From the NCBI RefSeq assembly GCF_037042905.1, contig NC_087252.1, positions 36,766,001 through 36,830,000 on the forward strand: 64,000 nucleotides of DNA. Reading direction: 5' to 3'. Below are positions 3,566 through 63,447 of this stretch, piece after piece. This DNA comes from Lytechinus pictus (Eukaryota). Position numbers and translations under genes: made by a program. How positions within the stretch are numbered: the stretch's first letter is position 1; each line of letters starts with the position of its first letter. Under the pieces are notes generated by a model. That model had not been told where the DNA came from. It saw only the letters and a list, made by a program, of their open reading frames with translations, and did not search any database.

Positions 3566-4337
3566 TATCGTAGCACAAACGCTGAAAACAAAGAATAACG
3601 TACTGTTAGGAAAAAAATTGCTTGCATTTTTTCATCATAAACGTGTCTTCTTTCTTGAATAAAATCCAAGCACCTCGTTGAAATTGAATGTTCTTTAACA
3701 TATTTGAAAATAAAATCCGCCACCGTGGTGCTTATTTATATGATTTTTTGTGAGGGCAGGTCAGAAAACCCCATTCACTTTGTACAGGAAAGCTATATGG
3801 TGAGTTCCAAAAAGATTATGTCATGCGACGATCAATCCCTGTTATTCGAGATACTGTCGCTCTCGCAAAACCTGACATACCCGACTGCTAATGTCCATTC
3901 ACATCGATATTTCGATCGAGTCAAATCATTATTTGTGTAAATAATGCGTGCAGCCAGCACATCATAAAAGCTTGTAAAATTAGACATTGGAATCGTTTAC
4001 TCCTATAATCAAGTTATTTTGTTCGACTTTGAGACCAAATAGTTTAGTGAGTCAGTATCATATTTAAAATTGGAAGTTGACTTGAAACGAATATTTAGTC
4101 ACGCGAATCATGCAAAAATTCCTACGCTTCTAACAGGAGTAATTTAAAAAAAAAAAAAAAAGGACCTTTGTTTACTAAGGTCGATTCCTTGATGGATATG
4201 TATACAAATCAGTTATGCAAAATAGGATTTCTAGCTATTCAAATGTTGTATAATTATCGCGGTAGTTATATCGGAATGAAATCGATTTATTACATTTTCA
4301 CAGTGTGTCAACAACTACTACAAACAAATTGAGAGCC

Positions 4338-7300
4338 ATGGCTGGATCTGCAGATAAAGATTATCAGTAAGTAAGCCTATACTATGTATATTTCCCGACC
4401 CAACCAACCCCCCCCCCCCCCTCGAGAAAAGTGGGATTTCAGGAAAAATATATAAAAAATCAAACTAGCATAAAACTGAAATTTTAATAAAAATAGGATG
4501 TACGTTATAAAAAAAATGATATTTAAAGGTCAAAGCCCCCAAGAAATGTATTAATTTGAATAAATAAAGAAAAATATTTAAAAAAGATATATATAAAAAA
4601 ACAATCATGAAGCTGAAGCCTTCATCAAAATCTGATGTAAAATAAAAAAGTTATGATATTTTGAATTTTCGCATATTTTTCTCAAAACAGTTATATGCAC
4701 AACTCAGTGACATGCAAATGCGAGAGTCTATGATGTCTATCACTCACTATGTCTTTTGTTTTTTATTGTTTAAATTATACAATATTTCAATTTATACAGA
4801 ATTGACAATAATGTAAAACTTGACTAAACTACAGAATGTTAAACAATTTTAATTCCACAAGTTCAGGGAGGAATAAAGCTCGATTTCAAATGACATGGGT
4901 GAGAAAATTAGAATATTTCATATTTCATATAATAAAATACAAAAATAGTGAGTGCGTGGTGTCATCAGTCTCCTCATTTGCATACTGGCCAGGATGTGCA
5001 TATAACTGTTGTGTGAAATTTTGCGAAACTTTAAAATGTTATACCCTTTTTTTTATATAAAAATGAAAGTCAATGACGTAGCCCACTCAATAATCTTTTT
5101 TTTTCTTCTTCTTTTTCTTCATTGTGTTCCATGTTGAATATTTCTTTTTTGTAGAGAGCGTGTGTCAGTGGTAACCCAACATATTCAAGGATGAATCCAA
5201 TCTTCTTTCTCACTATAATGTGTGAAACGCGTTTTAGATAATAAATAGTGAGTGGATAGCGTCATCAGTTCCCCATTTGCCTACGGACAAAGATGAGCAC
5301 ATACATGATTTAACAGTTTTGCAAAATAATAAGTGAACATTGAAACTTAATTTCTATGATTTTACATCTTAACTTGTTAAAATTAGCATTATGCAATTTT
5401 TTTTTCTCGTTTTTTTAATTAGATATTTGCTCTTGTGGACATGTCTTTTAAATACTATCTTAAAATAATTTGATAGGTTATACAGATGAAAGTAGCGGTG
5501 AGTTTACATGATTATAATATATACTTGAATACAAGCGGTGATCTATAATTTAAAAAAAATGCGGCATTTCTTTTTTTTTCTACGTCTTCAGCTTTCTAGA
5601 CCAAAAGCTTCAGTCTCTGTATTTTGGTTTTTCCGCTGAACTGCGTTGGCCCACTCACCAATACATAGAATGAAGAGCTTGGAGGCCCGTACGTACAGAC
5701 AACGTATTAGCAGTAACGTTAGATCTAACATTCGGCGGAAACCCGATTTTCGGATCGTTTTTTTTTTTGTACATAAAATGTCACATTATGAAAAAGAAAT
5801 CACATCCATATTTACGAAAAAATGTTTAAAATTAAGAAATATCGTACCTTAGACCGCAGTTACCGCTCATTCCTTTCAAATGATGATCAAAACATCGTCA
5901 TCTTCGATCCTTTCGTTGGTCAACGTAAGTTGCCATCTTGGATGACGTCATCATCCTTACAGACGTATTTACCAGTCGCTATATATAGCGATTTGTGCCG
6001 CTGCTTTGCGCTTGTAGATGTGCGTGCGTTTGGAACTTGTCGCTCGCATTGATTGGCCAGGATATCGAAAATTTAATCGGAAAGCCTTGTAAAAGCACAA
6101 CTCGTAGACGGCTGCCATTTTTCCCTCTCCGGCAGAAAATTAAAAAATAAGGAATAACCCGGGGAATAACTCATCGGTAACACATATTTTCGATATTTTA
6201 TAGAACTTACATAGTATCAAAAGAAAGATTAGAGTCTAACGAAAATAGTGGGCCTTCATTCAAGATAATATAATGTCATTTAAAAGAAATTAAAATCTGG
6301 AAAAAAAAACCGTCCTCCGAATTGCCGACCAGATTACACATGCAGGCTCGCACTAGCACACTACCGTCGGTGAATGGGGATTTAGTAAAATGTCAGAAAT
6401 TGTTGAATAAATCCCCAGAAACGACGTTTATTCCTGTCTACAGCTTTTCATGCGTTTCATTATTTTCACGTACAATGTTTAAGGTCCAGCGAGAGGATGG
6501 TTACCGATCGCGAAATCTTAAAGATAAATGCCAGTTGTGGTAACGATCTCAAAATGACTTTTTACAGAATCCAATATATGAATAAAAAACATGTGCCGAA
6601 GGATTCTGGAAGAAATTGTGTAATCGCTGAGAAATAAGCGCGGATTCGGGCACTTCCGTCAGGTCTTTATTCCAGCAGTATAATATACACTGTACCGCGT
6701 ATGCCTATCTGTGTTGGCGATCTTCAGTGTGATTGTTTTTCAGCTTAGATTTTATGATTTCACAAAGTTCAGTTCATGTAACTGTACCAGATCTGGATCG
6801 ACGATGATAAAGCAATACTTAACCTTGGTTTTACAGACTCTCTCATGAAATAAGTGTTTTACTGCAACTACTGTAATTTAGCTTTAAACTTGTCAAGCGT
6901 CATGCCATTCGACAGTTCGATACACTCAAAGTGTGGTACGGTATGTCACTATTAAAACAGCTGCCATAGGACTTGTGTGCCAAAATTTATTAATTTTTTT
7001 TCATTTACTATTTTGTAATATTTTTTTTTGCTTCAATGGGGTCCCTTTCGACCAAAAATGATGGGGTTCAAATTTCGGCTCGGTGTAAGAATGGCAGAGG
7101 TAAAAATGGCAAAGGTAAAAATGGCAGAGGTAAAAATGGCAGAGGTAAAAATGGCAAAGGTAAAAATGGCAGAGGTAAAAATGGCAGACGTAAATATGGC
7201 AAAAGTAAAATGGCAGAGGTAATAATGGCAGAAGTAAAAATGGCAGAGGTAAAAATGGCAGACGTAAAAATGGCAGAGGTAAAATGACAGAGGTAAAAAT

Positions 7301-10300: not shown

Positions 10301-11176
10301 GTTAATTAAAAAAATCATATTACAATATGCTAGATAAGGCAACATTTATTCTAGTCCTAATAGACCCATCTCCGTGATCAGGAAAAGATCTAGATCGGCT
10401 ACGCTTTAATTTTTTTTTGTGGAGCGTTGTGGCCCAGTGATTAGTCTTCGGAGTTTGAAACAGAGGGTCGTGGGTTCGAATCCCAGCCATGGCGTAATTT
10501 CCTTCAGCAAGAAACTGATCCACAATGTGCTGCAATCAACCCAGGTGAGGTTAATGGGTACCGGTAGGAAGTTATTCCTTAAAAAGCTGTGTGCGCTATC
10601 AACGCCTGGCTTAGCCGGGTAATATAGGAGCGCCTTGAGCAACTAACAAGTTGGATATGTGCGCATTATAAATACCCTATATTATTATTATTATTAATTC
10701 CCATTGTCCACAACTTGATGTTCTGTTGGTATATTAAACAGCAACCGGACTTCTTCCAGAAATCTAGGGTTATTGTTCTATATTCTATCAAATGGGTCCT
10801 CTTCTCATTGTTCACTTCTCTTTCTTATTCAAGACCTTCCGTAAGATATGAGCTGTTCCAAGCAAACTTGCCTTCTGTATCGTTTCAAAGGACACCTCGA
10901 CTCCTAGAACAGCCAGAAAGCTTCTGTGTCTTGTTGTCACTGTTCCTAAGGCTCCGATGACTATTGGTACCACCTTCGTCTTCACCTTCCATATCCTTCT
11001 CAGCTCCCATGCCAGATCGTTATACTTCTGTATCTTTTCCTCCTCTTTACGCCAAGCTCTGCAGTCTCCCGGAATCGCAATATTTATGATGAGACATTCC
11101 TTTTCCTTCTTCTTTAAGAGAACGATGTCTGGTCGTCTAGCTTCAATGACCTTGTCTGTCTGGATATTATTATGAA

Positions 11177-11218
<42 letters not shown>

Positions 11219-13027
11219 GCAAAATTGGCTAGCCGGTTGTTGAATAGACGACGCTCGGCTGCTACACACCGACCCCAAGCATCACACTCGGGGTGGTTTA
11301 GTGTTGCGCGGCGGTTGTGAGCTCTTTTAACTCCACATACCGGTTGTGAGTGGTCAAACTTTAATATGGAATGGACATAGAACAAATATACCAGGCGTTT
11401 CTTTTGAAATTATAGCGGAAGTATTCATCCTCGGTTGGTCCTGCAATGTCGCAGAACCGACCTCGGATAAAATATTTCCACTATTTTTTTATCAAACCCC
11501 GTGTAAATGAAAAATACCCCCACTCCCTTTCTTATATATCACAAATCTTTTCTTACATCATATTTATCGATGAATGCCGATGTGACAGTTTCATAGTCTT
11601 CTGATATAATCTCATTTAGTTCGTCAGTGCATATATATGATTACGTGTAAACTTCATACTTGACTACTAATTGCCTCCCCACCCCCATCCTCTTGGGCAT
11701 GTCTCTGTCTCCCTCTCTGTCATCTGCATAATTATGATCACAGATAATAGTGTGCAGAGGTGTCGTGATAAAGCGGTTCAGTTACACGAGAGTTGATTAG
11801 ATGTGATTAGATTGGCATGTGTGTGCCTGGCTAGGGTACTCCCCTTGGAGTAGAGATGCGCACTTCATGATGTAAAGCGATTAGAAACCAACGAATGCAG
11901 TATGGAGCGCTGGATAAATGATGAATTTAGTTGCAAAAGGGGTTAGGTCCACTTTGGACCATTCCGAGAAAACCCATGTTTTTTTTTTATTCTCACTTAT
12001 TGCAATATTCTTATGAGAAACTAAATTGTCATGATGTACTACCCTATCATGTGAACATAAAATTTGGTATAAAAGAAATATACCTTTCTTAATTTTTGTT
12101 CTATATAGTTTTTGAAAAATTATCATTATGGACATAACCCCTTTTGCAAGCAAACTAAAATGAATCAATTGTCTTTTGATTAAAAAAGTGATTTGTATTT
12201 GCCACTTTCATTCACGTATTCATTTGAAGTTCAAATTTTCTTTGGTATCATCAAGGCGACTAAAAATTTAGAGGTTTAGAGACAAAAAAATAAAATTTAG
12301 GAAAAATTAACCTAACCCCTTTGGACAAATTAGTTCTTCAGAAGAGTTTGGTTGTAAAAGGGGTAAGGTCCACTCTAAGAAAAACATTTTTTCTCCAATA
12401 TTGCGATATTCTTATGCGAAACTGGATTTGCATGATACTCAACCATGAGAGCATAAAATTGGGTATAAAAGAAATCTACCTGTCTTCATATTTTTTAAGA
12501 TATTCTTTTCCAAAAAAAATCTGTGGGACCTAACTCCTTTTGAAAAAAAGGTGATTTTCTTTGCAATTTTAGCTATTTTTTTGTGGGAATTTCAACTTTT
12601 CTTTGGTATCATCTTATAGAGCTACTAAAAATCTTTACATTGAGACATAAATATCAAATTCGTTGAAAAATGGACCTAACCCCTTTTGCAAGTGAGCTCT
12701 TCAAATGTAACTATTATTTTCATTTTTATTTTTATCATTATTGTAATTATTACGTTCATTTTCAGTGCCAATATTCAAGTATCAGAGAGCAGTCTTGAAA
12801 ATCTTGCTGCCAATTTCCCTCACACGAAGTATAATGCCATATGCCCGAAGTTAGGGTGGACACACAACCAAGCTATGAGTAGATTGGCCCATCACAAAGA
12901 AGATTACACAGCAGCCACCTTGGAAGCTCTTAATGCGTGGAAGAATCAAACAGGAGGGGACAAGGCTAAATTGATCGAGATACTGAAGGACATCAAACTT
13001 GGTGGACTTGTACAATATTTAGATTAA
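4338..13027 (+). CDS. Death-domain protein, gene 1 (96 aa from the exon-C ATG; longer if upstream coding exons exist outside the window)
   Basis: join(4338-4366,12766-13027). gccATGG start, CA|gtaagt donor, ttttcag|T acceptor, phase 2 matched. MAGSADKDYH-ANIQVSESSLENLAANFPHTKYNAICPKLGWTHNQAMSRL...LEALNAWKNQTGGDKAKLIEILKDIKLGGLVQYLD; helical death-fold pattern (LG.., L..W, L...L..I). AATAAA at 13123. Confidence 0.75.
5597..6440 (+). mobile_element. Non-autonomous DNA transposon, TAGAC..GTCTA termini (Academ-like)
   Basis: Flanks CAGCTTTC / CAGCTTTTC. Both ends recur in the derivative at 24232-24454. Confidence 0.7.
6522..6883. mobile_element. Kolobok-like MITE
   Basis: TTAA on both flanks; imperfect TIR AGATAAATGCCAGT / ACTGTAATTTAGCT. 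Confidence 0.6.
7077..8781. mobile_element. Foldback DNA transposon (MULE/Merlin-type) with inverted 15-bp tandem arrays
   Basis: (ATGGCAGAGGTAAAA)n at ~7090-7310 and its reverse complement at ~8575-8770; GG..CC termini; 8-bp TSD CAAATTTC at 7069-7076 and 8782-8789. Confidence 0.75.
7453..7920. mobile_element. Kolobok-like MITE nested in the foldback
   Basis: TTAA|AGGGGAAATTCAC ... GTGAATTTCCGCT|TCAA. Confidence 0.6.
10421..10695 (+). mobile_element. tRNA-derived SINE
   Basis: A box TGGCCCAGTGA, B box GGTTCGAATCC, non-tRNA body, (TAT)n tail. Second copy at 51592-51878. Confidence 0.85.
10696..11165 (-). mobile_element. 5'-truncated R4/Dong-clade non-LTR retrotransposon fragment (REL endonuclease plus 3' UTR)
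   Basis: RRPDIVL...IINIAIP...KIQKYNDLAWELRRIW...PIVIGALG is a PD-(D/E)xK REL domain with the second D changed to N. Both ends abut (TAA)n. Confidence 0.8.
11920..12702 (+). mobile_element. ~780-bp MITE, Sola1-like, copy 1
   Basis: TIR core TTGCAAAAGGGGTTAGGTCC, terminal ..GAGCTCTTC, AAAT TSD on both sides. Confidence 0.75.
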
Positions 13028-14544
13028 TGACACCTATGAAAACTACACCCGAAATATTAAGTCATGTAACATAGTGCATTGTCCTGATCATTATGGTATA
13101 TAAACATGATAATAATAATGATAATAAAATGGTTAATGTATGTGGTTAGCGTGACTGTGAAATGGTGGAAACGCAAATTGTAATCGTTGATTTGATGTAA
13201 ATAGGGATATTTAATTGGTTTTCATAATTAAAAAATAAGAAAAACAAAGTCATTAAAGAATATCAGAGTTTCATTTTCAGTTATAATTTGTAAGTAACGT
13301 GCAAACAGCACAAAACACATTAATGTAATATCACAGGAAGATGCAATGTAATATAACGGGTTTTTTTTTTTACCAAAATGTATTTTATATCATGTTATTT
13401 TCCATTTATTACTTTTGTACAAATAAGACTGTAGTGACCAAACAAATTTCTTGAGATTTTTAAATACTTTTAACCACCATACGACCATTTCGGGTGTGGT
13501 AAATTATGACAAAGACTGCAAAACCTCATTAATTTTGGGGTCACGTGGGTCTTGTGTCAGTCTGCCGAGGAAAAATAGTCTTCCCCTTTATTATTCTAAA
13601 TCATATATTACTATTATTGTTGAACATATATGCATGAATATAAATATACAAATGTGTATGTTATATATACATTAACATCGATTTGATTTTATATTCATAT
13701 CAAAATTTGATGCAAAAGAAGTGATGTCGTGAATATTGAAATGCGGAGATATATCAGGAAAATCCCTGTAACGGGGCAGTAACATTATCCCATGCACAAC
13801 ATAAAAATGAAGTTGTCGCTGGCCGACTTGGGCCCCAACAAGACATTACGAACAGTTGAATGTGATGGTGTGCTGAATCACGTTTGCCTTTCGTTCAAGC
13901 ATGGTTGAATTGATAATTTATGGTCCTATGTGACATCATAATTTAGCAAAAATATATATTATTTTGTTATGAATTTCGGTTAAACTTCACAATTATTTTG
14001 GCTTTTTCATCTTTAATTGTATCAAAATCATTTTATTGTCAGAACGGTCTTTCTCTTTATTTTTCCAATTATTATTTCTCACTAGCAGCAATTACCCGTG
14101 GCCGCACAGGGGGTAGGAGTCATTTTTCTTTATCAAGGTGTGTATGTACAGCTAGACTTCCTATTCACACTGATAGCCAAGCAGTTTATTGATGAAATAA
14201 ATCTAAATAACTGATTCATATCAGACTTCTTTTTCAATATAGATAGGAGGTTCAATTAAGTTAAGCATCTTGGGTTGAACTGGAGAAAGAACTTCAATAA
14301 TCATTCCAGAGGGAAATCCAAATCTAACTATAAAATAAAAAAATGTATTAGAACACGGTGTATCCTGTAAGCAGTCAAGAGGCAATTATAGTGATATATA
14401 TATGTTTTCATTACATGTATTGGATCAGAAATAAATATGTACACTAAGTACATTGCACATACCTTACACCGTACATTAGACTGCGGTTGTTCGTACTTTT
14501 TAAATCAAAGGTTACGGGATGTCGAAAAGGAGTGAGAGTGAGAG

Positions 14545-21869: not shown

Positions 21870-22620
21870 CCATTATTTATAAATAATGATTATTTGATTT
21901 TCATTATTTATAAATAATGATTATTTGTTTTCATTATTTATAAATAATGATTATTTGTTTTTCATTATTTATAAATAATTTTTATTTGTTCTTCATTATT
22001 TATAAATAATAATTATTTGTTTTTCATTATTTATAAATAATGATTATTTGTTTTTCATTATTTATAAATAATGATTATTTGTTTTTTATTATCTATAAAT
22101 AATGATTATTTGTTTTTTATTATTTATAAATAATGATTTTCGTTTTTCATTATTTATAAATAATGACACTACGTACTTCATTATTTATAAATAATTGCAA
22201 TTCGTGTTTCCATTATCTATAAATAAGTTTTCTATTATTTATAAATACTAATCATTTATTAACAATGCCAGTGCACATTTCTTTATTTATGAATAATTTG
22301 TTGAGTTTCCCATTATTTATAAATAATGATTATTTGTTAAATAATGAAAACGTCTACTTCATTATTTATAAATAATTTTTTCGAGTGTGCCATTATTTTC
22401 ATTATTTATAAATAATCATTATTTAATGTTCGAGTTTTCCATTATTTATACATAAAGATTATTTGTTAAAAAATGAAATATCTACTTCATTATTTATAAA
22501 TAATAATTTAGTTTCAATATCCCATTATTTATAATAATCATTATTTATAAACAATTTTTACAGTTTGCCATTATATACAAATAATCATTATTAATATACA
22601 AATAACCATTATTTATTAAA
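21870..22620. repeat. AT-rich ~30-bp tandem repeat with palindromic core CATTATTTATAAATAATG (left arm)
   Basis: Directly visible; mirrored at ~37840-38525. Confidence 0.9.
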
Positions 22621-51878: not shown

Positions 51879-52386
51879 GTTTTATTCAATTTTGGACCGT
51901 TTTGGGGAATTTAAAGAAGAGAGCGCCCTTGTAGTAGAAAGCGCCCTCCGTTTTTTTAAGCAATAATATGTTTCCCAATAATTACACATTGATACATTAT
52001 TTCAAAGCAATGAAGCAATATAGACTGAGTAAGTGATGAGAAAACTCAATGGAATTCTCTTCTATCTGCATTTTTTTCAATGGGGAACCCGAGCACTAGC
52101 TTCGACTTTCTTAAAAAGTATCTGCACTTTCTCTAATATCTTAGTAAAAAAAATATAAGTTTGGGATGGGGGGCTTAAAATATGCAAATGTATTACTGAT
52201 ATACAATATAATATGAATATGTTTTTACATAATTGTGTGGCGTATGAATTAGAGAGGATAGAAGTTCAGCAACTAAAGCAATACAACTTTTTTATTACAA
52301 GTTTTGCTGTTATTGGGGTATGTGACAATATAAGCGGGGAGGGGGGTAATAATAGGTTCATTTTCAATTTTCTTGTGTATGTTATA

Positions 52387-53203
52387 CAGTGCGTCCCACA
52401 AAAACGAAACCGAGCTTTATCGTTGATTTATCATAACTTAATCACAAATACAATAGACAAATAACCTACCATTGTAAAGCTTTGAATCTCCCCCTTTCAA
52501 CCAAAATTATTTAGATTATATCACATTCACGCATGAGTGAACAAAAACAATTTGAAGAGGGGATACCAAAAACTCACTTGGCGGGCTGAATCTGGGTTTC
52601 AAAGGAAAACCACACCTTAAAAAAGTTAAAAATCTGTTCTTTTATATGATGCCTCAATTACACAAAATGGTCACGAAAAAACAAAGTTCTGGTTATTGGA
52701 AATAAGGCTTGAATTTCAACAATTTCATAAAATGAAGAGGCAATCGCCCAGACTCACTCGACACTTCGTTTTGTTGACGATCGGCCATGCATTAAGTCTA
52801 TTTTGTTTTACAGTGCGATAGCTTCTGTGGGAAACCGGTGAAAACACGTTTATTTAAAGAAATTATGTAAATTCAAGCATTGTTTCGAAGGAATATGACT
52901 GTTTTACTTCTTGACCATTTTCTGTGATTAAGGTATCAAATGAAAAGGCAGATATTGAACTTTTTAGGCATATGATTTTCTTTTTAAAATTCAGATACCC
53001 CCACCTAATGAGTTTTTGGTATAATTCCTTCACATTGTTTCTGCTCACTTATGCGTGAATAAAGAATAATCTAAGTAATTTCAGATGAAAGCAGAGATTC
53101 TAAGCTTTACATTGGTGGGTCATTTGTCTATTTTATTTATGATTACGTTGTGATAAATCATCGCTTAATATCGGTTTCGGTTTTTTTTTTGTGGGACGCA
53201 CTG
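52387..53203. mobile_element. Tc1/mariner-type MITE (CAGTGCGTCCC), copy 1
   Basis: TA TSD, long imperfect TIRs; second copy at 55634-56456, fragment at ~16245-16440. Confidence 0.88.
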
Positions 53204-54062
53204 TATAGTAACTTTTACAAATATCGTTAGTACTCTGTGGCCGAGTAATAGTAGCAAACACAATTTTATGTGTGTGTGTGCTCTCTTTAAATACCGACAG
53301 CTGTAATATTTTTCCTCTGATTTATGTAATCGAATCATATTTAGGTAGTATTGTCCTCGCTATTGTAGGCCTACATAGTACGAATTCATTTTTTTTTCTA
53401 TTCTGCTGACTTTAATATTGTTCGAAATTGTCATTAAATTCAAATCAATGTATTATTCAATTTACATGAATGATATCATGTCTGATTTGTACACAATGTT
53501 AATTCTTATTATGTTATATTGCTTTTGTGCTATAAATTACGTAAAATATGTAAAACTAATTCAAATATCAAATACAATTTGCAAACTGAAAAAAAAAATA
53601 GTTTCATCACTACATTTAAGAAATTCAGGGCCCTCGGAAATGCAGAGACCAGAGTAAGCAAGTGTGCAAATTTGTGTGTAGAAGAGAGAAAAAGAGACAA
53701 ATAGGCTAAATGACAAAATCAAAGCATGAATTTTATTATGTTGACGATTATGAGGGACTAAAAATAATAAATACTGTCTGTGACAGCCACAATATTTTTG
53801 AACAAATTGGTTTAAAAAAATACTACAGGCTATACGGTAGGAAGCCTACCAGACTTTTTATTTCGACTTAAATCAGTTTAGTTTGGGTGCGCAGATTATC
53901 ATCATTATCATCTTCATCATCTGATATAGAAGTCGTTGCGGTGGCATGTAATTCCCGGTCAACGAGGAATAAGAAATAGTAGGTTTAAGATCCACTCAGA
54001 GCAACGGTGCTCCCTGTGTTACAAACAGTGCATTTATCTGCATTGTTGAATGCAGCACTCTA

Positions 54063-54508
54063 CACAGCAAAAACTGTGGTGTTAACCGGTGTACATAGAG
54101 GAACACACCAGTTATTTTACACCGGTGTTTAATTGACAGTGTTAGTTTAACACCTATGGGCATTTTCACGGTAACTGACGTTACACGGCACAAGTTTACA
54201 CACTTGTCATTGTGTGTATGATTATCTCTAAAACAACAAATGATGGGAATTTGCTTTAAAGCAAACTCCCATCATTTGTTGTTTAAGAGAGAATCATACA
54301 CACAGTGAAAAGTGTGTAAAATTGATTGTGCCGTGTAACGTCAGTTACCGAGAAAATGCCCATATGTGTTATAACAGCCACCTTCGGTTGTTACATTTAC
54401 ACTCTTTTGTGTTATGTTCAATCTCTAGTGTGTGGTTTCAACACCTCAGGGTGTGGTCCTCTATTGACACCAACTGGTGTCGGTTTTAACACCACGGTTT
54501 TTACAGTG
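54063..54508. mobile_element. CAC..GTG palindromic MITE (EnSpm/CACTA-like)
   Basis: TA on both flanks; near-perfect internal hairpin ~54150-54370 centred on GCTTTAAAGC. Confidence 0.7.
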
Positions 54509-54632
54509 TAAACGCAGCTAGAAACAAGTCTGGACTCTAAATTTCAGTCAGGAATCAGGGTAATCACTGCTGAAATTGTGTCTGGCTTCATGAATCATGG
54601 CATTCTTCCCGAGTATAATAATAAAATATATA

Positions 54633-55623
54633 CAGTGCATATCAAAAAAAAGTTTACACTTTGAAAAAGCTCTGGGAATTCAAAAATATACAACATGTGG
54701 GTATTTTTCTCACATATAATCTTGGGTTGGGTCTCATCTATCCAATGAAAGTAAAAGTTTTGACAGAATGTTACACTTGATGGACCACTGTCCATTTTTG
54801 TAAAGCTCGCAGAAATCTGTTTGCGCAGAAATGCTCATTTTCACGCTGTGTCAAGGGGAAAGGGCGAAATCAAACTTACCCTGCCAAACATTTCTCATAT
54901 ATCTCCTTTGCACTTTTAGTCAATTGAAATAAAACGGATACATTCAAGCATTTTGTAACAATTTTGCCACCCAAATTGAAATTTCAACATTTAGTAAGCA
55001 CAACCTTTACCTTTTTGTGCCAGCTGGATTTTGATGACATAACTGAACCTGAACAAAAGTTTATATATGAGACATCTCCAGCATGTATTCACTGAGTTTT
55101 TATTATTTAAAGTGGGTTTACATTTCATTTTTCATTTAATACTTGTTTCTCCACGCTTTTCCCAAGCTTGACAATGATTAACAAAATTCAAATCAAGCCT
55201 AAGCCATTTCATGTAAATCACAGCTCAGTGTAAAGCAAATATCGTCTCGATGGCCTCGGTGTGTGGGGGAGTGGGGTGGGGCGCAATGCACCCTTCGAAG
55301 TGTTTTGGGCAAGGAAACAAGTTCAAAAAGGTAAAAGATATCTTCAAATCAATTTTGCTAGCTAATTTCCATGTTTTCTTCATGATTTAGGTCTACTTTT
55401 ATTTACATATCTAACTACTTCAAAGTTCTGCGCAAATCATTTTTCACTAAATTTTCAAAAGTAAGTGGTGCTCACTCGAGTGGAAACATTTTTCGACAGT
55501 TATATCGTCATTTGCTTAAATAGATCTGTACCAATGTTAAAATGTCGAAAAATCTTCATGATATTAGAAATATATAATTTTACAGGATTTATTCATTGTG
55601 TAAACTTTTTTTGATACGCACTG
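54633..55623. mobile_element. Tc1/mariner-type MITE (CAGTGC(A/G)TATCAAAAAAA)
   Basis: TA TSD; TIR CAGTGCATATCAAAAAAAAGTTTACAC / GTGTAAACTTTTTTTGATACGCACTG. Confidence 0.88.
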
Positions 55624-55633
55624 TATATATATA

Positions 55634-56453
55634 CAGTGCGTCCCACAAAAAACGAAACCGAGATTTATCGGTGATTTATCATAACTTAATCACAAATACA
55701 ATAGACAAATGACCTACCATTTTAAAGCTTAGAATCTCTTCTTTCCTCTGAAATTACTTAGATTAAAAAAAATCCATTCACGCATGAGTGAGCAAAAACA
55801 ATTTGAAAAGGGGATACCAAAAAGACACTTGGCGGGCCGTATCTGGGTTTTAAAAAGGAAAACCACATTTTCAAAAAGTTCAATATCTGCTCTTTAATTT
55901 GATACCTCAATTACAGAAAATGGTCAAGAAATAACAAAGTTCTGGTTATTTGAAATAAGGCTTGAATTTCAATAATTTCAGAAAATGAAGAGGTTTTACA
56001 GGCTAGCGTTCAAACTCACTCGACACTCCGTTTTGTTGACGATCAGCCATGTATGAAGTATTTTGTTACCGTGCGATAGCTTCTGTGGGAAACCGGTGAA
56101 AACACGTTTATTTAATGAAATTATGGAAATACAAGCATTGTTTCGAGGGATCCTTACTTTTTTACTTCTTGACCATTTTCTGTGATTAAGGTATCAAAGA
56201 AAAGAACAGATATTGAACTTTTTAGTCATGTGATTTTCTTTTTGAAATTCAGATACCCCCTGCCAAATAAGTGTTTGGCATCCTTTCTTCGAATTGTTTT
56301 TGCTCACTCATGTGTGAATGAGGAGTAATCTAAGAAATGAAAGAAGAGACTCTAAGGCTAAGCTATACATTGATAGGTCATTTGTCTATTTTATTTATGA
56401 TGAAGTTATGATAAATCATCGCTAAATTTCGGTTTCGTTTTTTCTGGGACGCA

Positions 56454-56456
<3 letters not shown>
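55634..56456. mobile_element. Tc1/mariner-type MITE (CAGTGCGTCCC), copy 2
   Basis: Colinear with 52387-53203; embedded in (TA)n. Confidence 0.88.

Positions 56457-56524
<68 letters not shown>
56457..56524. repeat. (TA)n microsatellite
   Basis: Direct observation. Confidence 0.95.
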
Positions 56525-56530
<6 letters not shown>

Positions 56531-56876
56531 ATCAGACAGCAGATTTTTCCGTCTCTAACCGGCCAAGCTATGGTCATGACCATGCCAGCGCTACATGGCC
56601 AGTTTAGAAACCTGCATGAAGAAACAAATCTGCTGCTAAAAGTAATCGTTACTTTGTAATAATTAAAGACTTAACTAGGCAATAATGCATGATTTTAGAA
56701 TAAAATTAGATTTGTATCTGTCACCTGACCTGAATACATCGTCAGAAAAAGTAGTCATTCATCTTATAGATCTCTTCATTCTGTCTTTGTTCTACTTCTT
56801 CGCCTCCTCCCTCCTCCTTAAAATGGATTGGCAGGGTAAGGGTTCCCAGCCCATCAAGGAAATCGTGATTTTTTTT

Positions 56877-57529
56877 CGTTTACACTTCGTCATTCCGAAG
56901 GTTCGTTATTCCGAAGGTTCTTTATTCCGAAGGTTCGTAATTCCGAAACACGTAAATTGCCTATACCTCGAAGTTCGTTCATCCGAAAACGAAAAAGGGT
57001 TCGTTAATCCGAACATTTGTGGCGTAATTCCGAAGGTTCGTTAATCCGAAAAGGAAATGAGAGTCGTAATTCCGAAGTTTCGTTAATCCGAAAACGAAAT
57101 GAGGCTTGTAATTCCGAAGGTTCGTTAGTCCGAAAACGAAATGAACAACGAACCTCATTTCGTTGTCGGATAAACGAACCTTCGGAACAACGAACCTTAT
57201 TTCGCTTTCGGATTAACGAACCTTCGGAACAACGAACCTCATTTCGTTTTCGGACAAACGAACCTTCGGAACAACGAACCTTATTTCGCTTTCGGATTAA
57301 CGAACCTTCGGAACAACGAACCTCATTTCGTTTTCGGACAAACGAACCTTCGGAACAACGAACCTTATTTCGCTTTCGGATTAACGAACCTTCGGAACAA
57401 CGAACCTCATTTCGTTTTCGGATTGTCGAACCTTCTGAACAACGAACCTTATTTCGCTTTCGGATTAACGAACCTTCGGAATATCCGAACCTTCGGAATA
57501 ACGAAGCTTCGGAATTACGAATGTATACG
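56877..57529. mobile_element. Tandem-repeat foldback MITE, copy 2, with expanded 42-bp array
   Basis: AACGAACCTTCGGAACAACGAACCT(T/C)ATTTCG(C/T)TTTCGGA units; reverse orientation of 41618-41985. Confidence 0.75.
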
Positions 57530-58169
57530 TTTTTTCTAGTCAGGGTAAAATCAGGGACTTTTGATCTGCCCAAAGGTCGAAAGCACGATAGTCAGTGAGA
57601 CTCTGTTTCTGTTATATTTTGTTGTATATTAAACAATATTCATTGAATGACATGGTTTTTTTAGCGTAGCCTTTTTACTACCGTACAAGTAAGCCTACTG
57701 ATTAACTGGTATTAGGGCATTTTTAAACTTCTTCACAGAAAAATCTGGAAATTTTGTTTTCTTGAAAAGCTGGGAACCCTGAGTGGGTTAAGCCAGCCGT
57801 TAACTATCTACAGTAGATCATATACATAGTGGTGGATAAATAAACATCATAATTTTTCCACCTCTATGATCGTATCATAGCGTTATTTTACAGAAAAATA
57901 GCCAAATGTATTGTTTTATCCCAAATTTTCAAAAATCCCCTGAAACAGACAAAAAATCCCCAAAGTTTGTTTGATCCCCAAATGATTTGTTTTCATCTCC
58001 ACAGGCTTTTGAAAATCCCCATATTTTTCCAGATTTGGGGATGGAGATATGGTCTCTCTAAGTGTACTCCAAATCGAGGGGCGCGCGTGTGAAGATTCGA
58101 ATCCGGTGCGCGGAAAGTAACTTTAAAAATTTCATCAGAAAATTGAAAACAAGTCACCATGTAAACTTT

Positions 58170-58620
58170 ACACATTAGACCAAGTGGCATGTAGACGAAA
58201 TGAATGTTAGACTATCTGGAAATTAGACCAATTGGAAATTAGCCGAAGTGGAAATTAGACCAAGTGGAAATTAGCCGAAAATGAAATTAGACCAACTGAA
58301 TAATGGACCAAGTGAGGATTAGACCAACTGGTATTACACCAAATGCAATTAGACCAAGTGATAATAAAATACCTTAGACGAAATGGCAATTACACCAAAT
58401 GAAAATTAGACCAAGTGACGATTAACCCAACTTGGCATTAGACCAAGTGGCTATTAGACCAAGTGTTCATTAGACCAATTGGCTATTAGACCAAGTGGTT
58501 ATTAGACTAATTGGCTATTAGACCAAGTGGTAATTAGACCAAAAGAAAGTTTGACTAAGTGGGTTTAGCCCGAATGTTGTTAGCCTATCTGATAATTAGA
58601 CCAAATGATATTAGACCATC
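58170..58620. repeat. ~20-bp minisatellite (ATTAGACCAAGTGG core)
   Basis: About 20 degenerate units. Confidence 0.85.
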
Positions 58621-58732
58621 CGTCAGTAACCCCCCCCCCCCTCCTTCACACTTCTTTACCAATGAACACTGGCACCACCATTGTTATATCAACATGTATA
58701 TTCCATCACTAAGTAAACAGACTTCCCATTGT

Positions 58733-59310
58733 GTAAGTCAGCCCACCTCAGGAAAATGTTGATTTGAATAAATGGAGAAAAATCAACTAGCATAATACTG
58801 AAAATCTCATCAAAATCGGAAGTAAAATAAGAAAGTTATTACATTTTAAGATTTTGTTTATGTTTCACGAAACAGTGACATGCAAATGAGACAGTCAATG
58901 ATCTCCCTCACTCACTATTTCGTTTGTTTGTTATTGTTTGAATTATAAATATTCATTTTTTACAGATTTGACAATAAGGAACAACTCACTGAAACATACA
59001 GTATTCGACAATGCTAATTCCACATGTTCAGGAAGGAATTAATCGTTGCTTCACTTGATAATGTGGTGAAAATAAGAACATTCACATTTCATATGATGAA
59101 ATATATAAGAAATAGTGAGTGGATGACATCATCAGTCTCCTCATTTTCATATCGGCCAGGGTGTGCATAAGACCTTTTTTTAAATTAAGCGAAACTTTAA
59201 AATGTAACTTTCTTATATCACATCCGATTTTGATGAAATTTTCAATGTTATGCTTGCTGGATTTTTCTCTTTTTATTCGAATCATCATTTTATTGGGTTG
59301 GACTTGACCT
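58733..59310. mobile_element. Kolobok-like MITE (..GGACTTGACCT|TTAA); relatives at ~4525-5450 and ~48880-49070
   Basis: Shared motifs TTCATCAAAATC(G/T)GA and GACATGCAAATG; TTAA at the 3' end. Confidence 0.6.
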
Positions 59311-59564
59311 TTAAAAGCTTATCGAGATTCAGAAATATCCAACAATCGTCTGCTTGTTCGAGGATCAGTTTCTTGCCCCCTTATTGCACGGTTTTGCTTA
59401 TTCTAATCAATATTCCAACGGTATGAATGTAGAAAGAAAACAAAATATGTTCATGATTTCTAAAAGAATAATAACCCGTCTGACTTGATCCTATGGCAAA
59501 TATAAATTAGGAAAAAACATTTTGCCGATTTATCGACATGTGTAATAGACCTTTTTGCTGTGTG

Positions 59565-59980
59565 TATTAATGAAGCACGCATTCGTTTGCCCTTAAGATG
59601 AGATAAATGTTTGTCATTCGCGGTCATGAGCGATAATATTACACGCAATAACTATTGTAGCAAACAATGCATTTAACCGCCGAGTCTATGGTTGTTTTGC
59701 CTTCGCCTATATTATAGTAGTCTATCGTCAAAAAGCCTGGTCAAAAAAGGAAAAGTATAATAAGGTAAGTACGTAATATCTGAATTGCTAAGTTTACTGT
59801 CAGGTGAAAAAGGGAACACAGAGAAACCTAGATATAAAGATGGGATACTGATTCGCCAATCGACATAGGTCCGGCGGCCTAATATTACCGTGCGCTGACG
59901 AACATTTTACATGACTGCACTGGCACGCACTCAAACAGATCAACTGTTGTTTGATACCACTATCGTGTGTTTGATACATT
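59565..59980 (+). promoter_or_regulatory. Putative promoter and first non-coding exon of DD gene 3 (donor AAG|GTAAGT at 59765)
   Basis: Consensus donor; colinear with 43260-43640. Confidence 0.5.
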
Positions 59981-60861
59981 TACACAGGTGAACTCTAAAT
60001 TTTGTTTCTCTCTCTTTTTAATCAGACGTTGATGAATCCATTCATCCATAACTGATCTAGAGATTTTGATTTTCGAATAATTTATCTTTGTTTGATTTAG
60101 ACTGAGATCTCATTTATATCAGTTAATACTCATTGATATATTTTTGTTCTTGGTTTGCTTTCTCTCTTGAAAAATTTAGTCACCAAATTATTCCCAAGGG
60201 GCTAGATTCGAAACATTTTTTATTCTAAAAGAGCTAAATTAAGTGTTAAGTGTCTTGACTATGAGTGTAGGATCTTAATGTATTTTTTTTTTCGTGACTG
60301 TTGCCTCATTTTGTATTTCTTTCAAATTTTCACTGGGTAGACATCAGAAAATATATAAAATATACTCTCTTTCACGTACGATATCGGAATGTCAAAATTA
60401 AATTAATGTGCTAAAATTGACTTTCTACTCAGTTTTTATTCCACATGAGCTATATGGAGCTATAAGGGGCTACATCCACGAAAATAAATATATATAATTG
60501 CTAAAATGGAAAGAGATAGTAGTGATTTTTAAAAAAACTTTGTTCACTGATTGAAACGCTCATTGTGGACTTAGCTCCATTTTGGAATAAGAATCCTCAT
60601 ATTATTATCATGTAATACAAAAAAAAGACGTGGAGAAACAAAACAGAGTGGAAGAAAGACTAGAGGAAGAGCAAAAATAAAAGAGGACTGGTAGCTCCAC
60701 AATGTTTCAATTAAGAAAAATATATGACGTCATCTTAAAGTCCCCTTCCCCCTCAAAATATATCATGTCGCAGTTTTTGTGCTGTTCCATATTTTACAAC
60801 CATCAAATTTCATGACATTTATTATCTGCCATTGTTTGTTTTGTTTCATGTTCTTAGAAAA

Positions 60862-60996
60862 ATGATCTCGAAGAACAATATGGACTTCGATTGGATTTTA
60901 AAACAAATCACAAAGGATTTACATAAAATATCCGAGATCGATGATCTCGGATCAGCCTTGGGATTCACTTCAGCAGATATCGGTCGATATACTGAC
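60862..60996 (+). pseudogene. Truncated duplicate of the DD exon (N-terminal half)
   Basis: MISKNNMDFDWILKQITKDLHKISEIDDLGSALGFTSADIGRYTD aligns with residues 1-45 of the 61147 ORF, then similarity stops; has its own acceptor ttcttag at 60857. Confidence 0.7.
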
Positions 60997-61146
60997 GTTG
61001 CAGACATATACATCAATTTATTAAATAATGCACAACTTGTACTTGATTTTTATGTAATGTTTTTTAATGTGTTTTCCTTTTTGTTTTTTTCTTTTTACCG
61101 AATCAGAACAAAATAAATCCACGGGGATATAAGCTACCTTTGCAAA

Positions 61147-63447
61147 ATGAGCTCAGCTACCAAACCGGATTTTGATGGAACCTTAAAACTAATTGCTAGG
61201 GCTATACACAAAAAGGTGGAGGTTGATAATCTCGGATCAGCCCTGGGATTCGGCCCTGCAGATATCGGTCGATATACTGATGAGAATGAAAAGCAGGGCG
61301 GGAACTATATGGGTACATTGGACATGCTCAGGACGTGGCGAAAAAGGCAGACGGTTTCCACTGAAAGACGGAATCTGAGATCCGCACTATCGACAGCTGA
61401 TTTAGCATCCCTGGCGGATCAGTATCTAAGCACACCCGAAAATGGTTAGCATGAACTTTGCTTTTGTTATCATCATTTATCATTATTACTATCAATTTTG
61501 CATACCATTGATTATGGAGTGATGCAAGAATAGATGAAGAGCTCACTTGCAGAAGGGGGTAGGTCAATTTTTCATCAAATTTGAATTTTTGGTCTCAATG
61601 TATAGATTTTAAGTATAGCTCTATAAGATGATAGCAATGAAAAGTTGAAATTCCCATTAAAAGTGAACTTAGAGGCAAAGAAAAATCACTTTTTTTTTTC
61701 AAAAGGGGTTAGTTCCATTTCAGTTTGGTTGCAAAAGGGGTTAGGTCCACACATAATTTTTTTGGAGAAGAATTTCTTTTTTAATATGAAGATAGGTAGA
61801 TTCATTTTTATACCCAATTTTGTGTTCTCATTGTAGGGTATCATAACAATTTAGTTTCGCATAAGAATATTGCAATATGGAATAATAAAAACAAATGATT
61901 TTCTTGGAGCGGACCTAACCCCATTTGCATCCAAAATCTTCTGAAATGCTAATCTGTCAAAAGGGGTTGGGTCCATTTTTTATAAATTTTGTTTTCTGTT
62001 TCAATTTTTTTTTTTAGTCGCTCTTGTGATACCAAAAAGAAAAATCACATTTTTTAATCAAAAGAGATTGGATTCATTTCAGTTTGCTAATGGGTTAGGT
62101 CCACAATAATATAGCTTTTGTTTAATATATAGAAAAAAAATTAAGACAGGTAGATTTCTTTTATACCCAATGTTATGTTCACGTGATAGGGTAGTACATC
62201 ATGACAATTTAGTTTCTCATAAGAATATTGCAATAAGTGAGAATAAAAAAAAACACGATTTTTCTCGGAATGGTTTAAAGTGAACCTAACCCCTTTTGCA
62301 ACAAAACTCTTCATATTTGGCATACATTTTCAAATTTTTACTGGAAATTTAAAATTGAACTATACTGTACTGTAGCAAATGACATTGAGCTTCTTGTTTG
62401 AAAAAGAAGACCAGCAACTGAATGTTAACCTAAAATAAATTTGTTTTGACCAAGTTTTTTTGCGACCCTCCATATGTATTGGTTCCCCTATTTTTGTGGA
62501 TGTGTGTTTGAGCATGATTGTTATTGATATTGATTTCATAACTTAATATTTATAATGATAGTGGTAGTAGTACGAGTAGCATTTAGTAGTAGGAGTAGAN
62601 NNNNNNNNNNNNNNNNNNNNNNNNNNNNNNNNNNNNNNNNNNNNNNNNNNNNNNNNNNNNNNNNNNNNNNNNNNNNNNNNNNNNNNNNNNNNNNNNNNNN
62701 NNNNNNNNNNNNNNNNNNNNNNNNNNNNNNNNNNNNNNNNNNNNNNNNNNNNNNNNNNNNNNNNNNNNNNNNNNNNNNNNNNNNNNNNNNNNNNNNNNNN
62801 NNNNNNNNNNNNNNNNNNNNNNNNNNNNNNNNNNNNNNNNNNNNNNNNNNNNNNNNNNNNNNNNNNNNNNNNNNNNNNNNNNNNNNNNNNNNNNNNNNNN
62901 NNNNNNNNNNNNNNNNNNNNNNNNNNNNNNNNNNNNNNNNTAGTAGTCCAACAAGTAGTAGCATCTATTATCAAAATTGATATTTGTTATCATAATTATC
63001 CTGATCCTCACCATCATCATCAACATTCTAAATATCATTTCTAAGATCCCTTGCCACTGGTCTATATTAGGTTAATCTTAGTACATATACCGATTCATCA
63101 AGCATTTGTTTTGCAGTTTTTGACAAAATGAATGACTGTTGATCTCTTCCGAAAGAAAAGGAATAATTGGGACATATTCAAACATATTTCTTATGATGTG
63201 ATGTGATTGCTGTAAATCTAAGGAGGACATTCTTGGTCATTGAAGTTAGTATAAATCTGTCCTTAGAAGTTATTTCATAATTGATACTAAAAGAGGCAGG
63301 GTTGCGATGGTTCTGTGTGAACATGGTAAAGGGGTTGTAGCATGGTAACTTCAATGAAATCAATTGATTTCAATAATTGTCCACAGGGTCAAACCCTCAG
63401 CCGACAATCCCACCACCAACACAGGGTGCAACAAACATCAATAAGAA
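61147..63447 (+). CDS. Death-domain protein, gene 3 (N-terminal DD plus Pro/Thr linker; 3'-incomplete)
   Basis: join(61147-61444,63387-63447,...). DD: DNLGSALGFGPADIGRY...GTLDMLRTWRKRQ..ERRNLRSAL...LASLADQYL. G|gttagc phase 1 joins ccacag|GG giving GSNPQPTIPPPTQGATNINK, then AA|gtgagt (phase 2). The unspliced ORF 61147-61449 would give 100 aa. Confidence 0.75.
61536..62312 (-). mobile_element. Sola1-like MITE, copy 3
   Basis: Reverse complement of 11920-12702; GAAGAG..CTCTTC termini; flanks AGAT / ATAT. Confidence 0.75.
62600..62940. other. Assembly gap (N)
   Basis: Run of N flanked by (TAG)n. Confidence 1.

What the first reader, a model, noticed from the sequence alone, without database searches (positions are those of the whole stretch)
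4304..63447. Hidden tandem family of small death-domain genes: DD-linker-(DD) adaptors and DD-only derivatives
Seen: three same-strand paralogous units that the ORF track does not join. Genes 1 and 2 each have a 63-nt exon (4304-4366; 48769-48831) with a TTTTCACAG acceptor, an ATG at the same offset and a phase-2 GTAAGT donor. Each splices in frame to a terminal ~87-90-codon death-fold exon, and both share the same upstream repeat. Gene 3 has a different N-terminal DD and a 61-nt linker exon exiting in phase 2, the phase the 63-nt exon accepts. Both 63-nt exons are open upstream of their ATG. Established: echinoid genomes have expanded DD-containing immune genes, and single-domain death-fold proteins (mammalian COPs/POPs) act as decoys. 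Inference: the ancestral unit is DD(A)-linker-linker-DD(B), a bipartite adaptor, and some copies are reduced to ~96-99-aa DD-only proteins. That would be an adaptor/decoy signalling cluster whose proteins have diverged strongly while exon structure is conserved.
Basis: partly seen in the sequence, partly recalled or inferred. Interest (0 to 1): 0.8.

Follow-up and report, generated by a model that had tools for sequence, protein, structure and literature searches.

The report
Sea-urchin small death-domain gene cluster
The window holds three real, same-strand members of a sea-urchin family of small death-domain signalling genes; one is shown by RNA to encode a 99-residue protein that is just one death domain, and relatives are already annotated, as uncharacterized proteins, in other urchins.

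Summary
Both 63-nt exons, their ATGs, their GTAAGT donors and the two terminal exons lie where stated.

- **Domains:** both terminal exons pass Pfam's Death threshold. All three domain types give confident six-helix models whose best PDB matches are death domains.
- **Gene 2:** RNA contigs from four runs show junction 48831/50101. They also show that the 63-nt exon's acceptor is used by a non-coding first exon ending at 43438. Gene 2 is therefore a three-exon gene for a 99-aa DD-only protein.
- **Gene 1:** its terminal exon is transcribed, but its junction is not shown.
- **Four-exon unit:** DD(A), 61-nt linker, 63-nt linker, DD(B) exists as consecutive exons in the Lytechinus variegatus ortholog LOC121419506. 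There it sits behind Ig and transmembrane exons. S. purpuratus has ~200-aa DD(A)-linker-DD(B) proteins with one linker exon.
- **Order of blocks:** in this window the two orthologous blocks are permuted. E1-L2-DD(B) (gene 2) lies upstream of DD(A)-L1 (gene 3) on one contig. What gene 3 joins beyond 64000 is unknown.
- **Gaps:** both assembly gaps are intronic.

The adaptor/decoy function is inference. This is a new member of a known kind.

The parts
4304..4366 (+). Gene 1, 63-nt exon (L2 type). Acceptor ttttcacag, ATG at 4338 in a good Kozak context (gccATGg), donor GTAAGT, exit phase 2. The frame is open upstream of the ATG (VSTTTTNKLRA).
   Evidence: Whether the acceptor is used, and by which upstream exon, was not shown.
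12766..13027 (+). Gene 1, terminal DD(B) exon (coding part; the transcript runs at least to about 13500). With the ATG at 4338 it gives a 96-aa ORF.
   Evidence: Pfam Death 23.1 bits against a cut-off of 22.6. AF2 pLDDT 93.9 with six helices. Best PDB matches are TNFR1, RAIDD and ankyrin death domains, TM 0.76-0.81. Stretch 12740-13500 is held at 0.96-0.97 by eight runs.
43324..43438 (+). Gene 2, non-coding first exon E1 (the 5' end is approximate). Donor AAG|GTAATA. It carries an in-frame TGA and two short upstream ORFs.
   Evidence: An RNA contig of run X1 carries 113 more letters upstream of 48767. The last 30 match 43407-43436 uniquely. The exon end and donor are conserved in L. variegatus.
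48769..48831 (+). Gene 2, 63-nt exon (L2). ATG at 48803, exit phase 2.
   Evidence: Both borders are used in contigs of four runs. It is orthologous to the fully coding 63-nt exon of L. variegatus LOC121419506, with 75% aa identity when read in full.
50101..51238 (+). Gene 2, terminal exon. DD(B) coding part 50101-50371, then a 3' UTR running at least to 51238. The ORF is 99 aa.
   Evidence: Junction 48831/50101 in four runs; contig pieces cover 50101-51238. Pfam Death 25.0 bits. 91% aa identity to the C-terminus of LOC121419506, with dN 0.047 and dS 0.064.
60863..60999 (+). Truncated upstream copy of the 5' half of the DD(A) exon. It keeps the L. variegatus-like acceptor (ttcttag|aaaaATG), diverges after codon ~45 (RYTD), and its frame then runs to a stop at about 61114.
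61147..61444 (+). Gene 3, DD(A) exon of 298 nt. It has its own ATG, an in-frame TAA 30 nt upstream, and a donor G|GTTAGC in phase 1.
   Evidence: No Pfam hit at E<=1. 139 representative relatives. AF2 pLDDT 88.3 with six helices. Best PDB matches are TRADD, ankyrin-G, FADD and RAIDD death domains. The family profile finds the Fas DD at 1.2e-3. 69% aa identity to L. variegatus, dN/dS 0.40.
63387..63447 (+). Gene 3, 61-nt linker exon L1 (phase 1 in, phase 2 out; encodes GSNPQPTIPPPTQGATNINK). Donor GTGAGT. The gene then runs off the window.
   Evidence: It is orthologous to the 61-nt exon of LOC121419506 (encoding GSTPQASIPPPTLGATSINKK) by collinearity.
2859..3565 (.). 198-bp tandem repeat upstream of gene 1's 63-nt exon. 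A second copy lies at about 47797-48487 upstream of gene 2's.
   Evidence: Contig depth over the second copy is high in all runs, and the repeat is also at L004 46.5-47.1 kb. It is a multi-copy element.
46888..47105 (.). Assembly gap inside gene 2's intron 1.
   Evidence: The RNA contig that runs on upstream of the 63-nt exon matches 43407-43436, on the other side of the gap. Not filled.
62600..62940 (.). Assembly gap inside gene 3's intron, between DD(A) and L1.
   Evidence: The flanks are collinear with L004 35346-35805 and 35866-36383. Not filled.

Best explanation
What is shown.
- The window carries three same-strand pieces of an echinoid gene family built from two distinct death domains.
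- DD(A) is the same subtype that heads urchin NACHT, TIR, helicase and GTPase-like proteins. DD(B) is a canonical Pfam Death domain.
- Two mini-exons join them: L1 (61 nt, phase 1 to 2) and L2 (63 nt, phase 2 to 2).
- Gene 2 is transcribed from its own non-coding first exon E1 into L2 and the DD(B) exon. Translation from the ATG inside L2 gives a 99-aa protein that is only DD(B).
- Gene 1 has the same L2-plus-DD(B) layout, with a strongly diverged DD(B) (28% identity) and a transcribed terminal exon.
- Gene 3 is the DD(A)-L1 half and runs off the window.
- In L. variegatus the orthologous exons form one annotated gene: A, L1, a 21-kb intron containing E1, then L2 and B.
- In this genome the A-L1 block sits downstream of the E1-L2-B block. 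That fits the junction of a tandem duplication, or a transposition.

What is inferred.
- The long form is a two-headed homotypic adaptor. DD(A) would dock onto the DD(A) heads of sensor proteins, and DD(B) would recruit a DD(B)-type partner into a helical death-domain oligomer.
- The DD(B)-only products made from the internal promoter would compete for, or cap, the DD(B) side. That would make them regulators of the COP/POP kind.
For: Exon signals and ORFs.

RNA: junction 48831/50101 and use of the acceptor at 48769 by the exon ending at 43438, in contigs of four runs. Gene 1's terminal exon is held at 0.96-0.97 by eight runs.

Death-domain identity: Pfam Death above threshold for both DD(B) exons. 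AF2 six-helix models with pLDDT 88.3 and 93.9, with death domains filling the top of the PDB hit list. Profile hits to the Fas and PIDD death domains.

DD(A) as a shared head: its relatives carry NACHT, TIR, DEAD-helicase, GTPase-like or Death domains.

The four-exon unit in L. variegatus LOC121419506.

S. purpuratus relatives: tandem ~200-aa A-L1-B genes, and a DD(B)-only isoform X2 of LOC105446927.

Collinear blocks and their permutation. E1 donor conserved in L. variegatus.

Constraint: dN/dS is 0.25 against the paralog LOC121420649 and 0.40 for DD(A).
Against: - Gene 1's upstream exon and gene 3's downstream exon are unknown.
- DD(A) has no Pfam hit, and its profile hit to the Fas DD is only 1.2e-3.
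- DD(B) of gene 2 against its ortholog gives dN/dS 0.72 on 13 differences, so there is little power to show constraint.
- The L. variegatus long form is a computational RefSeq model. Its Ig-TM part could be a fusion of two genes.
- No binding or signalling data exist. The literature searches were not aimed at this family by name, and the papers read do not describe it.
Confidence: 0.7

Rival explanations
1. Gene 3 is an orphaned DD(A)-L1 remnant. After the rearrangement it has no L2-DD(B) cassette downstream, so it is a DD(A)-only gene or a decaying half-gene.
For: Its orthologous L2-DD(B) lies upstream as gene 2. Its exon is locally rearranged, with a truncated duplicate of the 5' half and a new upstream flank. 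DD(A) is more diverged from L. variegatus (dS 0.58) than the flanking non-coding DNA (about 80% identical).
Against: The 99-codon ORF is intact with dN/dS 0.40. L1 keeps its length, frame, acceptor and a GTGAGT donor. The block junction is what a tandem duplication would leave, and that predicts a second cassette beyond 64000.
Confidence: 0.25
2. The block order in the window is an assembly error. In reality DD(A)-L1 precedes E1-L2-DD(B) as in L. variegatus, so genes 2 and 3 are one gene with two promoters.
For: The L. variegatus order. The window has two gaps and many repeats near the junction at about 57.5-59.9 kb.
Against: L2, DD(B) and the DD(A) exon lie in that order on one gap-free stretch, 47106-62599. 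The E1-to-L2 order across the first gap is confirmed by RNA.
Confidence: 0.08
3. Gene 3 continues into a large effector domain (NACHT-LRR, TIR, helicase), so it is a sensor rather than a two-DD protein.
For: The DD(A) subtype heads such proteins in S. purpuratus and L. pictus.
Against: L1 is collinear with the L. variegatus L1 that is annotated as joining L2-DD(B). Its peptide resembles the linkers of the S. purpuratus two-DD genes, not those of the NACHT or TIR members.
Confidence: 0.07
4. Gene 1 is not a working DD-only gene. Either its 63-nt exon and DD(B) exon are not joined, or the transcript is non-functional.
For: The junction across the 8.4-kb intron was not seen. No close homolog was found among proteins of 47-150 aa.
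Against: The ORF is intact, all 15 invariant family columns are kept, the six-helix model is confident, the terminal exon is transcribed, and the 63-nt exon is conserved with matching phase.
Confidence: 0.1

Closest known systems
Lytechinus variegatus LOC121419506 (XP_041469893.1, 'uncharacterized protein', 701 aa)
   Same: Residues 471-701 come from consecutive DD(A), 61-nt, 63-nt and DD(B) exons that are collinear with genes 3 and 2 of the window. Amino-acid identity is 91% for DD(B), 75% for L2 and 69% for DD(A).
   Different: In L. variegatus the exons are in the order A-L1-L2-B in one gene model, behind two Ig domains, a TM segment and nine 60-nt repeat exons. In the window the blocks are permuted, no Ig or TM exon is present, and RNA shows an E1-L2-B transcript.
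Strongylocentrotus purpuratus two-death-domain proteins LOC100893340 (194 aa), LOC100892994 (206 aa) and the neighbouring 207-aa gene
   Same: A 298-nt DD(A) first coding exon in phase 1, a linker exon going from phase 1 to 2, and a terminal DD(B) exon accepting phase 2. The genes lie in same-strand tandem.
   Different: They have one linker exon only (31 or 58 nt) and no 63-nt L2. The proteins are 27-64% identical to those of the window.
S. purpuratus LOC105446927 isoforms X1 (202 aa, two death domains) and X2 (110 aa, DD(B) only)
   Same: One locus is predicted to give both a two-DD protein and a DD(B)-only protein through an alternative 5' end.
   Different: Isoform X2 starts in a coding alternative exon. 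In gene 2 the first exon is non-coding and the ATG lies inside L2. The S. purpuratus models come from an older annotation and could not be located on a contig.
Mammalian single-domain death-fold regulators (CARD-only COPs, PYD-only POPs); comparison from general knowledge
   Same: A protein that is just one death-fold domain and is related to a domain of a larger signalling protein.
   Different: Those are CARD or PYD subfamily proteins with a shown inhibitory function. Here the domain is a DD-subfamily domain and no function has been tested.
Death-NACHT-LRR receptors of sea urchin (Zhang et al. 2010, PMC2858798)
   Same: The DD(A) subtype of gene 3 is the N-terminal domain of S. purpuratus NACHT proteins (P0006, P0009).
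   Different: No NACHT or LRR exon lies in the window. The collinear L. variegatus exon chain ends in DD(B).

Membership tests
Death domain (Pfam PF00531; DD subfamily of the death-fold superfamily) | Sequence match to the family model above its curated threshold | tested here: met
   Gene 1 DD(B) scores 23.1 bits and gene 2 DD(B) 25.0 bits against a cut-off of 22.6. The DD(B) profile finds the PIDD DD at 6.6e-6.
Death domain (Pfam PF00531), applied to gene 3's DD(A) | Sequence match to the family model above its curated threshold | tested here: not met
   No Pfam family at E<=1. A 40-sequence family profile reaches the Fas DD only at 1.2e-3. Membership of the fold therefore rests on structure prediction.
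Death-fold superfamily | Six-helix antiparallel bundle | tested here: met
   AF2 models: DD(A) pLDDT 88.3 and gene 1 DD(B) pLDDT 93.9, six helices each. The top of the Foldseek PDB list is filled by death domains, with TM up to 0.71 and 0.81. E-values are weak (0.02-1), as is usual for small helical domains. These are predictions, not solved structures.
Death-fold superfamily | Homotypic oligomerisation into helical signalling assemblies | not testable with these tools
   No complex prediction or binding assay was available.
Echinoid two-DD genes (DD(A), linker(s), DD(B)) | Exon plan: 298-nt DD(A) exon in phase 1; L1 going from phase 1 to 2; optional 63-nt L2 going from phase 2 to 2; terminal DD(B) exon accepting phase 2 | tested here: met
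   Each exon type is present with the right length and phase. The plan matches L. variegatus and S. purpuratus genes.
Echinoid two-DD genes (DD(A), linker(s), DD(B)) | Both domains joined in one transcript in this genome | tested here: inconclusive
   The only transcript seen (gene 2) is E1-L2-DD(B), without DD(A). No DD(A)-like ORF lies upstream of gene 2 in the window. Gene 3's 3' end is off the window.
Single-domain death-fold regulators (COP/POP-like decoys) | The mature protein consists of one death-fold domain only | tested here: met
   Gene 2: the spliced contig has an in-frame stop upstream of the ATG and a 99-aa ORF, of which 89 aa come from the DD(B) exon. Gene 1: a 96-aa ORF if it is spliced as proposed.
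Single-domain death-fold regulators (COP/POP-like decoys) | Inhibits assembly or signalling of the multi-domain relative | not testable with these tools
   Needs binding and signalling assays.

The most novel reading that the evidence does not exclude
The locus may work as a mix-and-match system. One DD(A)-L1 5' module could splice into any of several alternative L2-DD(B) terminal cassettes. The cassettes of genes 1 and 2 both keep an open, conserved L2 frame and a phase-2 acceptor, yet their DD(B)s are only 28% identical. Each cassette also has an internal promoter that releases its DD(B) alone. That would give a combinatorial set of adaptors and matched competitors from one cluster.
Probability: 0.1. 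Interest if true: 0.7.

Novelty: new member of a known kind. Interest (0 to 1): 0.4.

Why it matters
Sea urchins have hundreds of NLR, TLR and death-domain genes, but little is known about how those sensors connect to downstream signalling. A small protein that pairs the sensor-type DD(A) with a second, different death domain is a natural candidate for that link. A DD(B)-only product from an internal promoter would be a built-in regulator.

The cluster also gives a clean example of exon phases preserved across S. purpuratus, Lytechinus and this genome, while the domains diverge to 28% identity and the blocks are rearranged.

The genes themselves are not new. Close relatives are already in RefSeq as uncharacterized or 'death domain-containing' proteins.

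Tried and rejected
1. A wrong turn of my own. This was refuted by LOC121419506, which has the 61-nt and 63-nt exons in series, both coding.

2. LOC121420649 (P0001, 75% identity) first looked like gene 2's ortholog. It is a paralog elsewhere on the same L. variegatus chromosome record. The ortholog is the tail of LOC121419506 (91% identity, collinear).

3. A protein search with gene 1's DD(B) found no candidate.

4. P0146 is not on record for a locus look-up.

5. A search for Ig or TM exons of LOC121419506 in the window found none.

6. Earlier scan notes could not be queried beyond the window's ends, and a word search found nothing.

7. The literature search on 'death domain-only' and 'decoy' gave nothing relevant.

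8. dN/dS among the window's paralogs was not attempted. At 28% aa and 45% nt identity they are too diverged for it to mean anything.

9. Rfam found only one tRNA in the window.

Full report
**1. The observation**

- Exon 4304-4366 follows ttttcacag, has an ATG at 4338 and ends before GTAAGT.
- Exon 48769-48831 has the same acceptor, an ATG at the same offset (48803) and the same donor.
- Both leave in phase 2 and continue in frame into terminal exons at 12766 and 50101. The ORFs are 96 and 99 aa.
- Gene 3 has a 298-nt exon from an ATG at 61147 (phase 1 out) and a 61-nt exon at 63387-63447 (phase 1 in, phase 2 out).

This is more than chance. The two 63-nt exons are 63.5% identical without gaps, and 8 of 200,000 random window pairs reach that. 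The terminal exons find each other at about 1e-5 among 1,532 six-frame fragments. No other DD(B)- or DD(A)-like ORF exists in the window, apart from a truncated DD(A) copy just upstream of gene 3.

**2. The gaps**

Both gaps (46888-47105 and 62600-62940) fall in introns.
- The first is bridged by RNA. A contig runs from the 63-nt exon into 113 further letters, the last 30 of which match 43407-43436 uniquely.
- The second has flanks collinear with the L. variegatus intron. Window 62135-62591 matches L004 35346-35805, and 63023-63537 matches L004 35866-36383.

No reading frame crosses a gap, and nothing was filled in.

**3. Are they death domains?**

- Both DD(B) exons pass Pfam's Death threshold (23.1 and 25.0 bits against 22.6).
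- Gene 3's domain has no Pfam hit at E<=1. It does have 139 representative relatives.
- With alignments, AlphaFold2 gives six-helix bundles for gene 3's DD(A) (pLDDT 88.3) and gene 1's DD(B) (pLDDT 93.9).
- Death domains fill the top of the Foldseek PDB list for both. For DD(A) these are TRADD, ankyrin-G, FADD and RAIDD, with TM up to 0.71. For DD(B) they are TNFR1, RAIDD and ankyrin, with TM up to 0.81. E-values are weak, as expected for small helical domains.
- Family profiles find the Fas DD at 1.2e-3 and the PIDD DD at 6.6e-6.

**4. RNA**

Eight small runs from one organism hold about 0.22 of the stretch 48500-50500 (seven runs) and 0.75 (one run). They are labelled 'RNA?' or of unknown type. 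I laid four of them.
- All four contain the junction 48831/50101 (GT..AG).
- In three, the contig also starts at or runs upstream of 48769. The acceptor of the 63-nt exon is therefore used.
- The upstream partner ends at 43438 with donor AAG|GTAATA. It has an in-frame TGA and two short upstream ORFs, so translation starts at 48803.
- The 3' UTR runs at least to 51238.

Gene 2 is thus a three-exon gene for a 99-aa DD-only protein.

For gene 1, the stretch 12740-13500 is held at 0.96-0.97 by eight of the same runs. The terminal exon is therefore transcribed, but its junction was not seen. No RNA test of gene 3 was possible.

**5. Relatives**

*DD(A) as a shared head.* DD(A) is a promiscuous N-terminal module. 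Its relatives carry NACHT, TIR, a DEAD helicase, a GTPase-like P-loop, or Death. This fits the Death-NACHT-LRR receptors described for sea urchin (PMC2858798).

*S. purpuratus.* It has ~200-aa proteins with DD(A), one linker exon and DD(B). Two of them lie in tandem on one strand. It also has a predicted DD(B)-only isoform of one such locus. From these I first thought the 63-nt exon was merely the single linker's homolog.

*L. variegatus.* That idea was wrong. LOC121419506 (701 aa) has consecutive exons for:
- DD(A);
- a 61-nt linker, GSTPQASIPPPTLGATSINKK;
- a 63-nt linker read in full, VSTKTTKASIGMAAAPKNSNA;
- DD(B).

These exons sit behind Ig, TM and repeat exons.

**6. Orthology and rearrangement**

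Unique alignments give two collinear blocks.
- Window 21058-53594 matches L004 50966-62748. This block holds E1, L2, DD(B) and the downstream flank.
- Window 60007-63732 matches L004 33642-37064. This block holds DD(A) and L1.

In L. variegatus the second block precedes the first, separated by a 21-kb intron. In the window it follows. L2, DD(B) and DD(A) lie on one gap-free stretch, 47106-62599. Gene 3's DD(A)-L1 therefore cannot be cis-spliced to gene 2's cassette.

The junction is what a tandem duplication of the whole unit would leave: the downstream-of-B flank followed by the upstream-of-A flank, at about 57.5-59.9 kb, filled with repeats. A transposition is also possible.

Further details of the blocks:
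- E1 and its donor are conserved in L. variegatus inside the long intron. The E1-L2-DD(B) transcript is therefore probably an old internal-promoter product.
- The truncated DD(A) copy at 60863-60999 is the positional ortholog of the 5' half of the L. variegatus exon, and it keeps that exon's acceptor.
- The full exon at 61147 has a new upstream flank, an in-frame stop and its own ATG.
- The window has no Ig or TM exons.

**7. Constraint**

| Comparison | dN | dS | dN/dS |
|---|---|---|---|
| Gene 2 DD(B) vs paralog LOC121420649 | 0.134 | 0.529 | 0.25 |
| Gene 2 DD(B) vs its ortholog | 0.047 | 0.064 | 0.72 |
| Gene 3 DD(A) vs L. variegatus | 0.23 | 0.58 | 0.40 |

The ortholog comparison rests on only 13 differences, so the exon is much better conserved than the surrounding ~80-83% identical DNA. 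DD(A) is more diverged than its flanks, and the differences are concentrated in its first half.

**8. Reading**

Shown:
- a cluster of real death-domain genes;
- a verified DD-only transcript;
- conserved exon phases across three urchin lineages;
- a permuted block order.

Inferred:
- The long form is a two-headed adaptor linking DD(A)-headed sensors to a DD(B) partner.
- The DD(B)-only products regulate that link.

Unknown:
- gene 1's upstream exon;
- gene 3's downstream exon;
- whether the L. variegatus Ig-TM fusion is real.

The family is already present in public annotations as uncharacterized proteins, so this is a new member of a known kind, of moderate interest.

Noticed in passing
window 51590-51760 and 10419-10584: A tRNA-derived SINE-like element with a tRNA-like head containing GGTTCGAATCC. 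One copy lies in the stretch downstream of gene 2's shown 3' UTR and one in gene 1's long intron (88% identical). Contig depth there is 41,000-55,000 in all four runs, so it is a very abundant repeat in transcripts.
   Followed up: partly
window 17213-17301 (-): An 89-nt tRNA-Tyr (GTA) gene, presumably with an intron. Rfam scores it at 52.5 bits, and ARAGORN agrees.
   Followed up: partly
window 193-2721 (+): Three consecutive long ORFs (139, 331 and 356 aa). The last has a weak reverse-transcriptase match (RVT_1, E 0.0036). This is probably a decayed retroelement at the window's start.
   Followed up: partly
window 21671-38723: About 17 kb that is absent from the collinear L. variegatus locus. 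It contains a DDE_Tnp_4 (Harbinger-type) transposase ORF at 33603-34070 (-) (E 1.4e-11) and flanking 31-bp tandem repeats at 21871-22226 and 38198-38556. This agrees with another note of the scan that calls it a Harbinger.
   Followed up: partly
window 11919-12706, 42338-43099, 61540-62316 (-); L004 16.7-28.6 kb: A ~640-800-bp repeat present next to all three genes. In L. variegatus it is amplified as nine ~1.3-kb tandem units, each carrying one 60-nt exon of LOC121419506 (repeat peptide NKDEEQEAPVSNDPESDSKH). This looks like an exon array carried on tandem repeat units.
   Followed up: no
window 4279-4386 vs 48744-48851: The 63-nt exons and their intronic flanks are 66% identical between genes 1 and 2, while their DD(B) exons are only 45% identical in DNA (28% in protein). 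The small, largely 5'-untranslated exon is better kept than the domain. Either the exon is under constraint or the two copies have been homogenised by gene conversion. This remains unexplained.
   Followed up: partly
window 50101-50371 vs L004 60022-60288: The DD(B) exon of gene 2 is 95% identical in DNA to L. variegatus (dS 0.064), while the surrounding introns and UTR are about 80-83% identical. Synonymous sites look unusually conserved, though the counts are small.
   Followed up: partly
window 57023-57481: A 42/84-bp tandem array (about 8 copies, 89-97% identical) near the rearrangement junction. The ORF across it gave only a chance-level Pfam match (Endotoxin_C, E 0.00097, below its threshold).
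   Followed up: no
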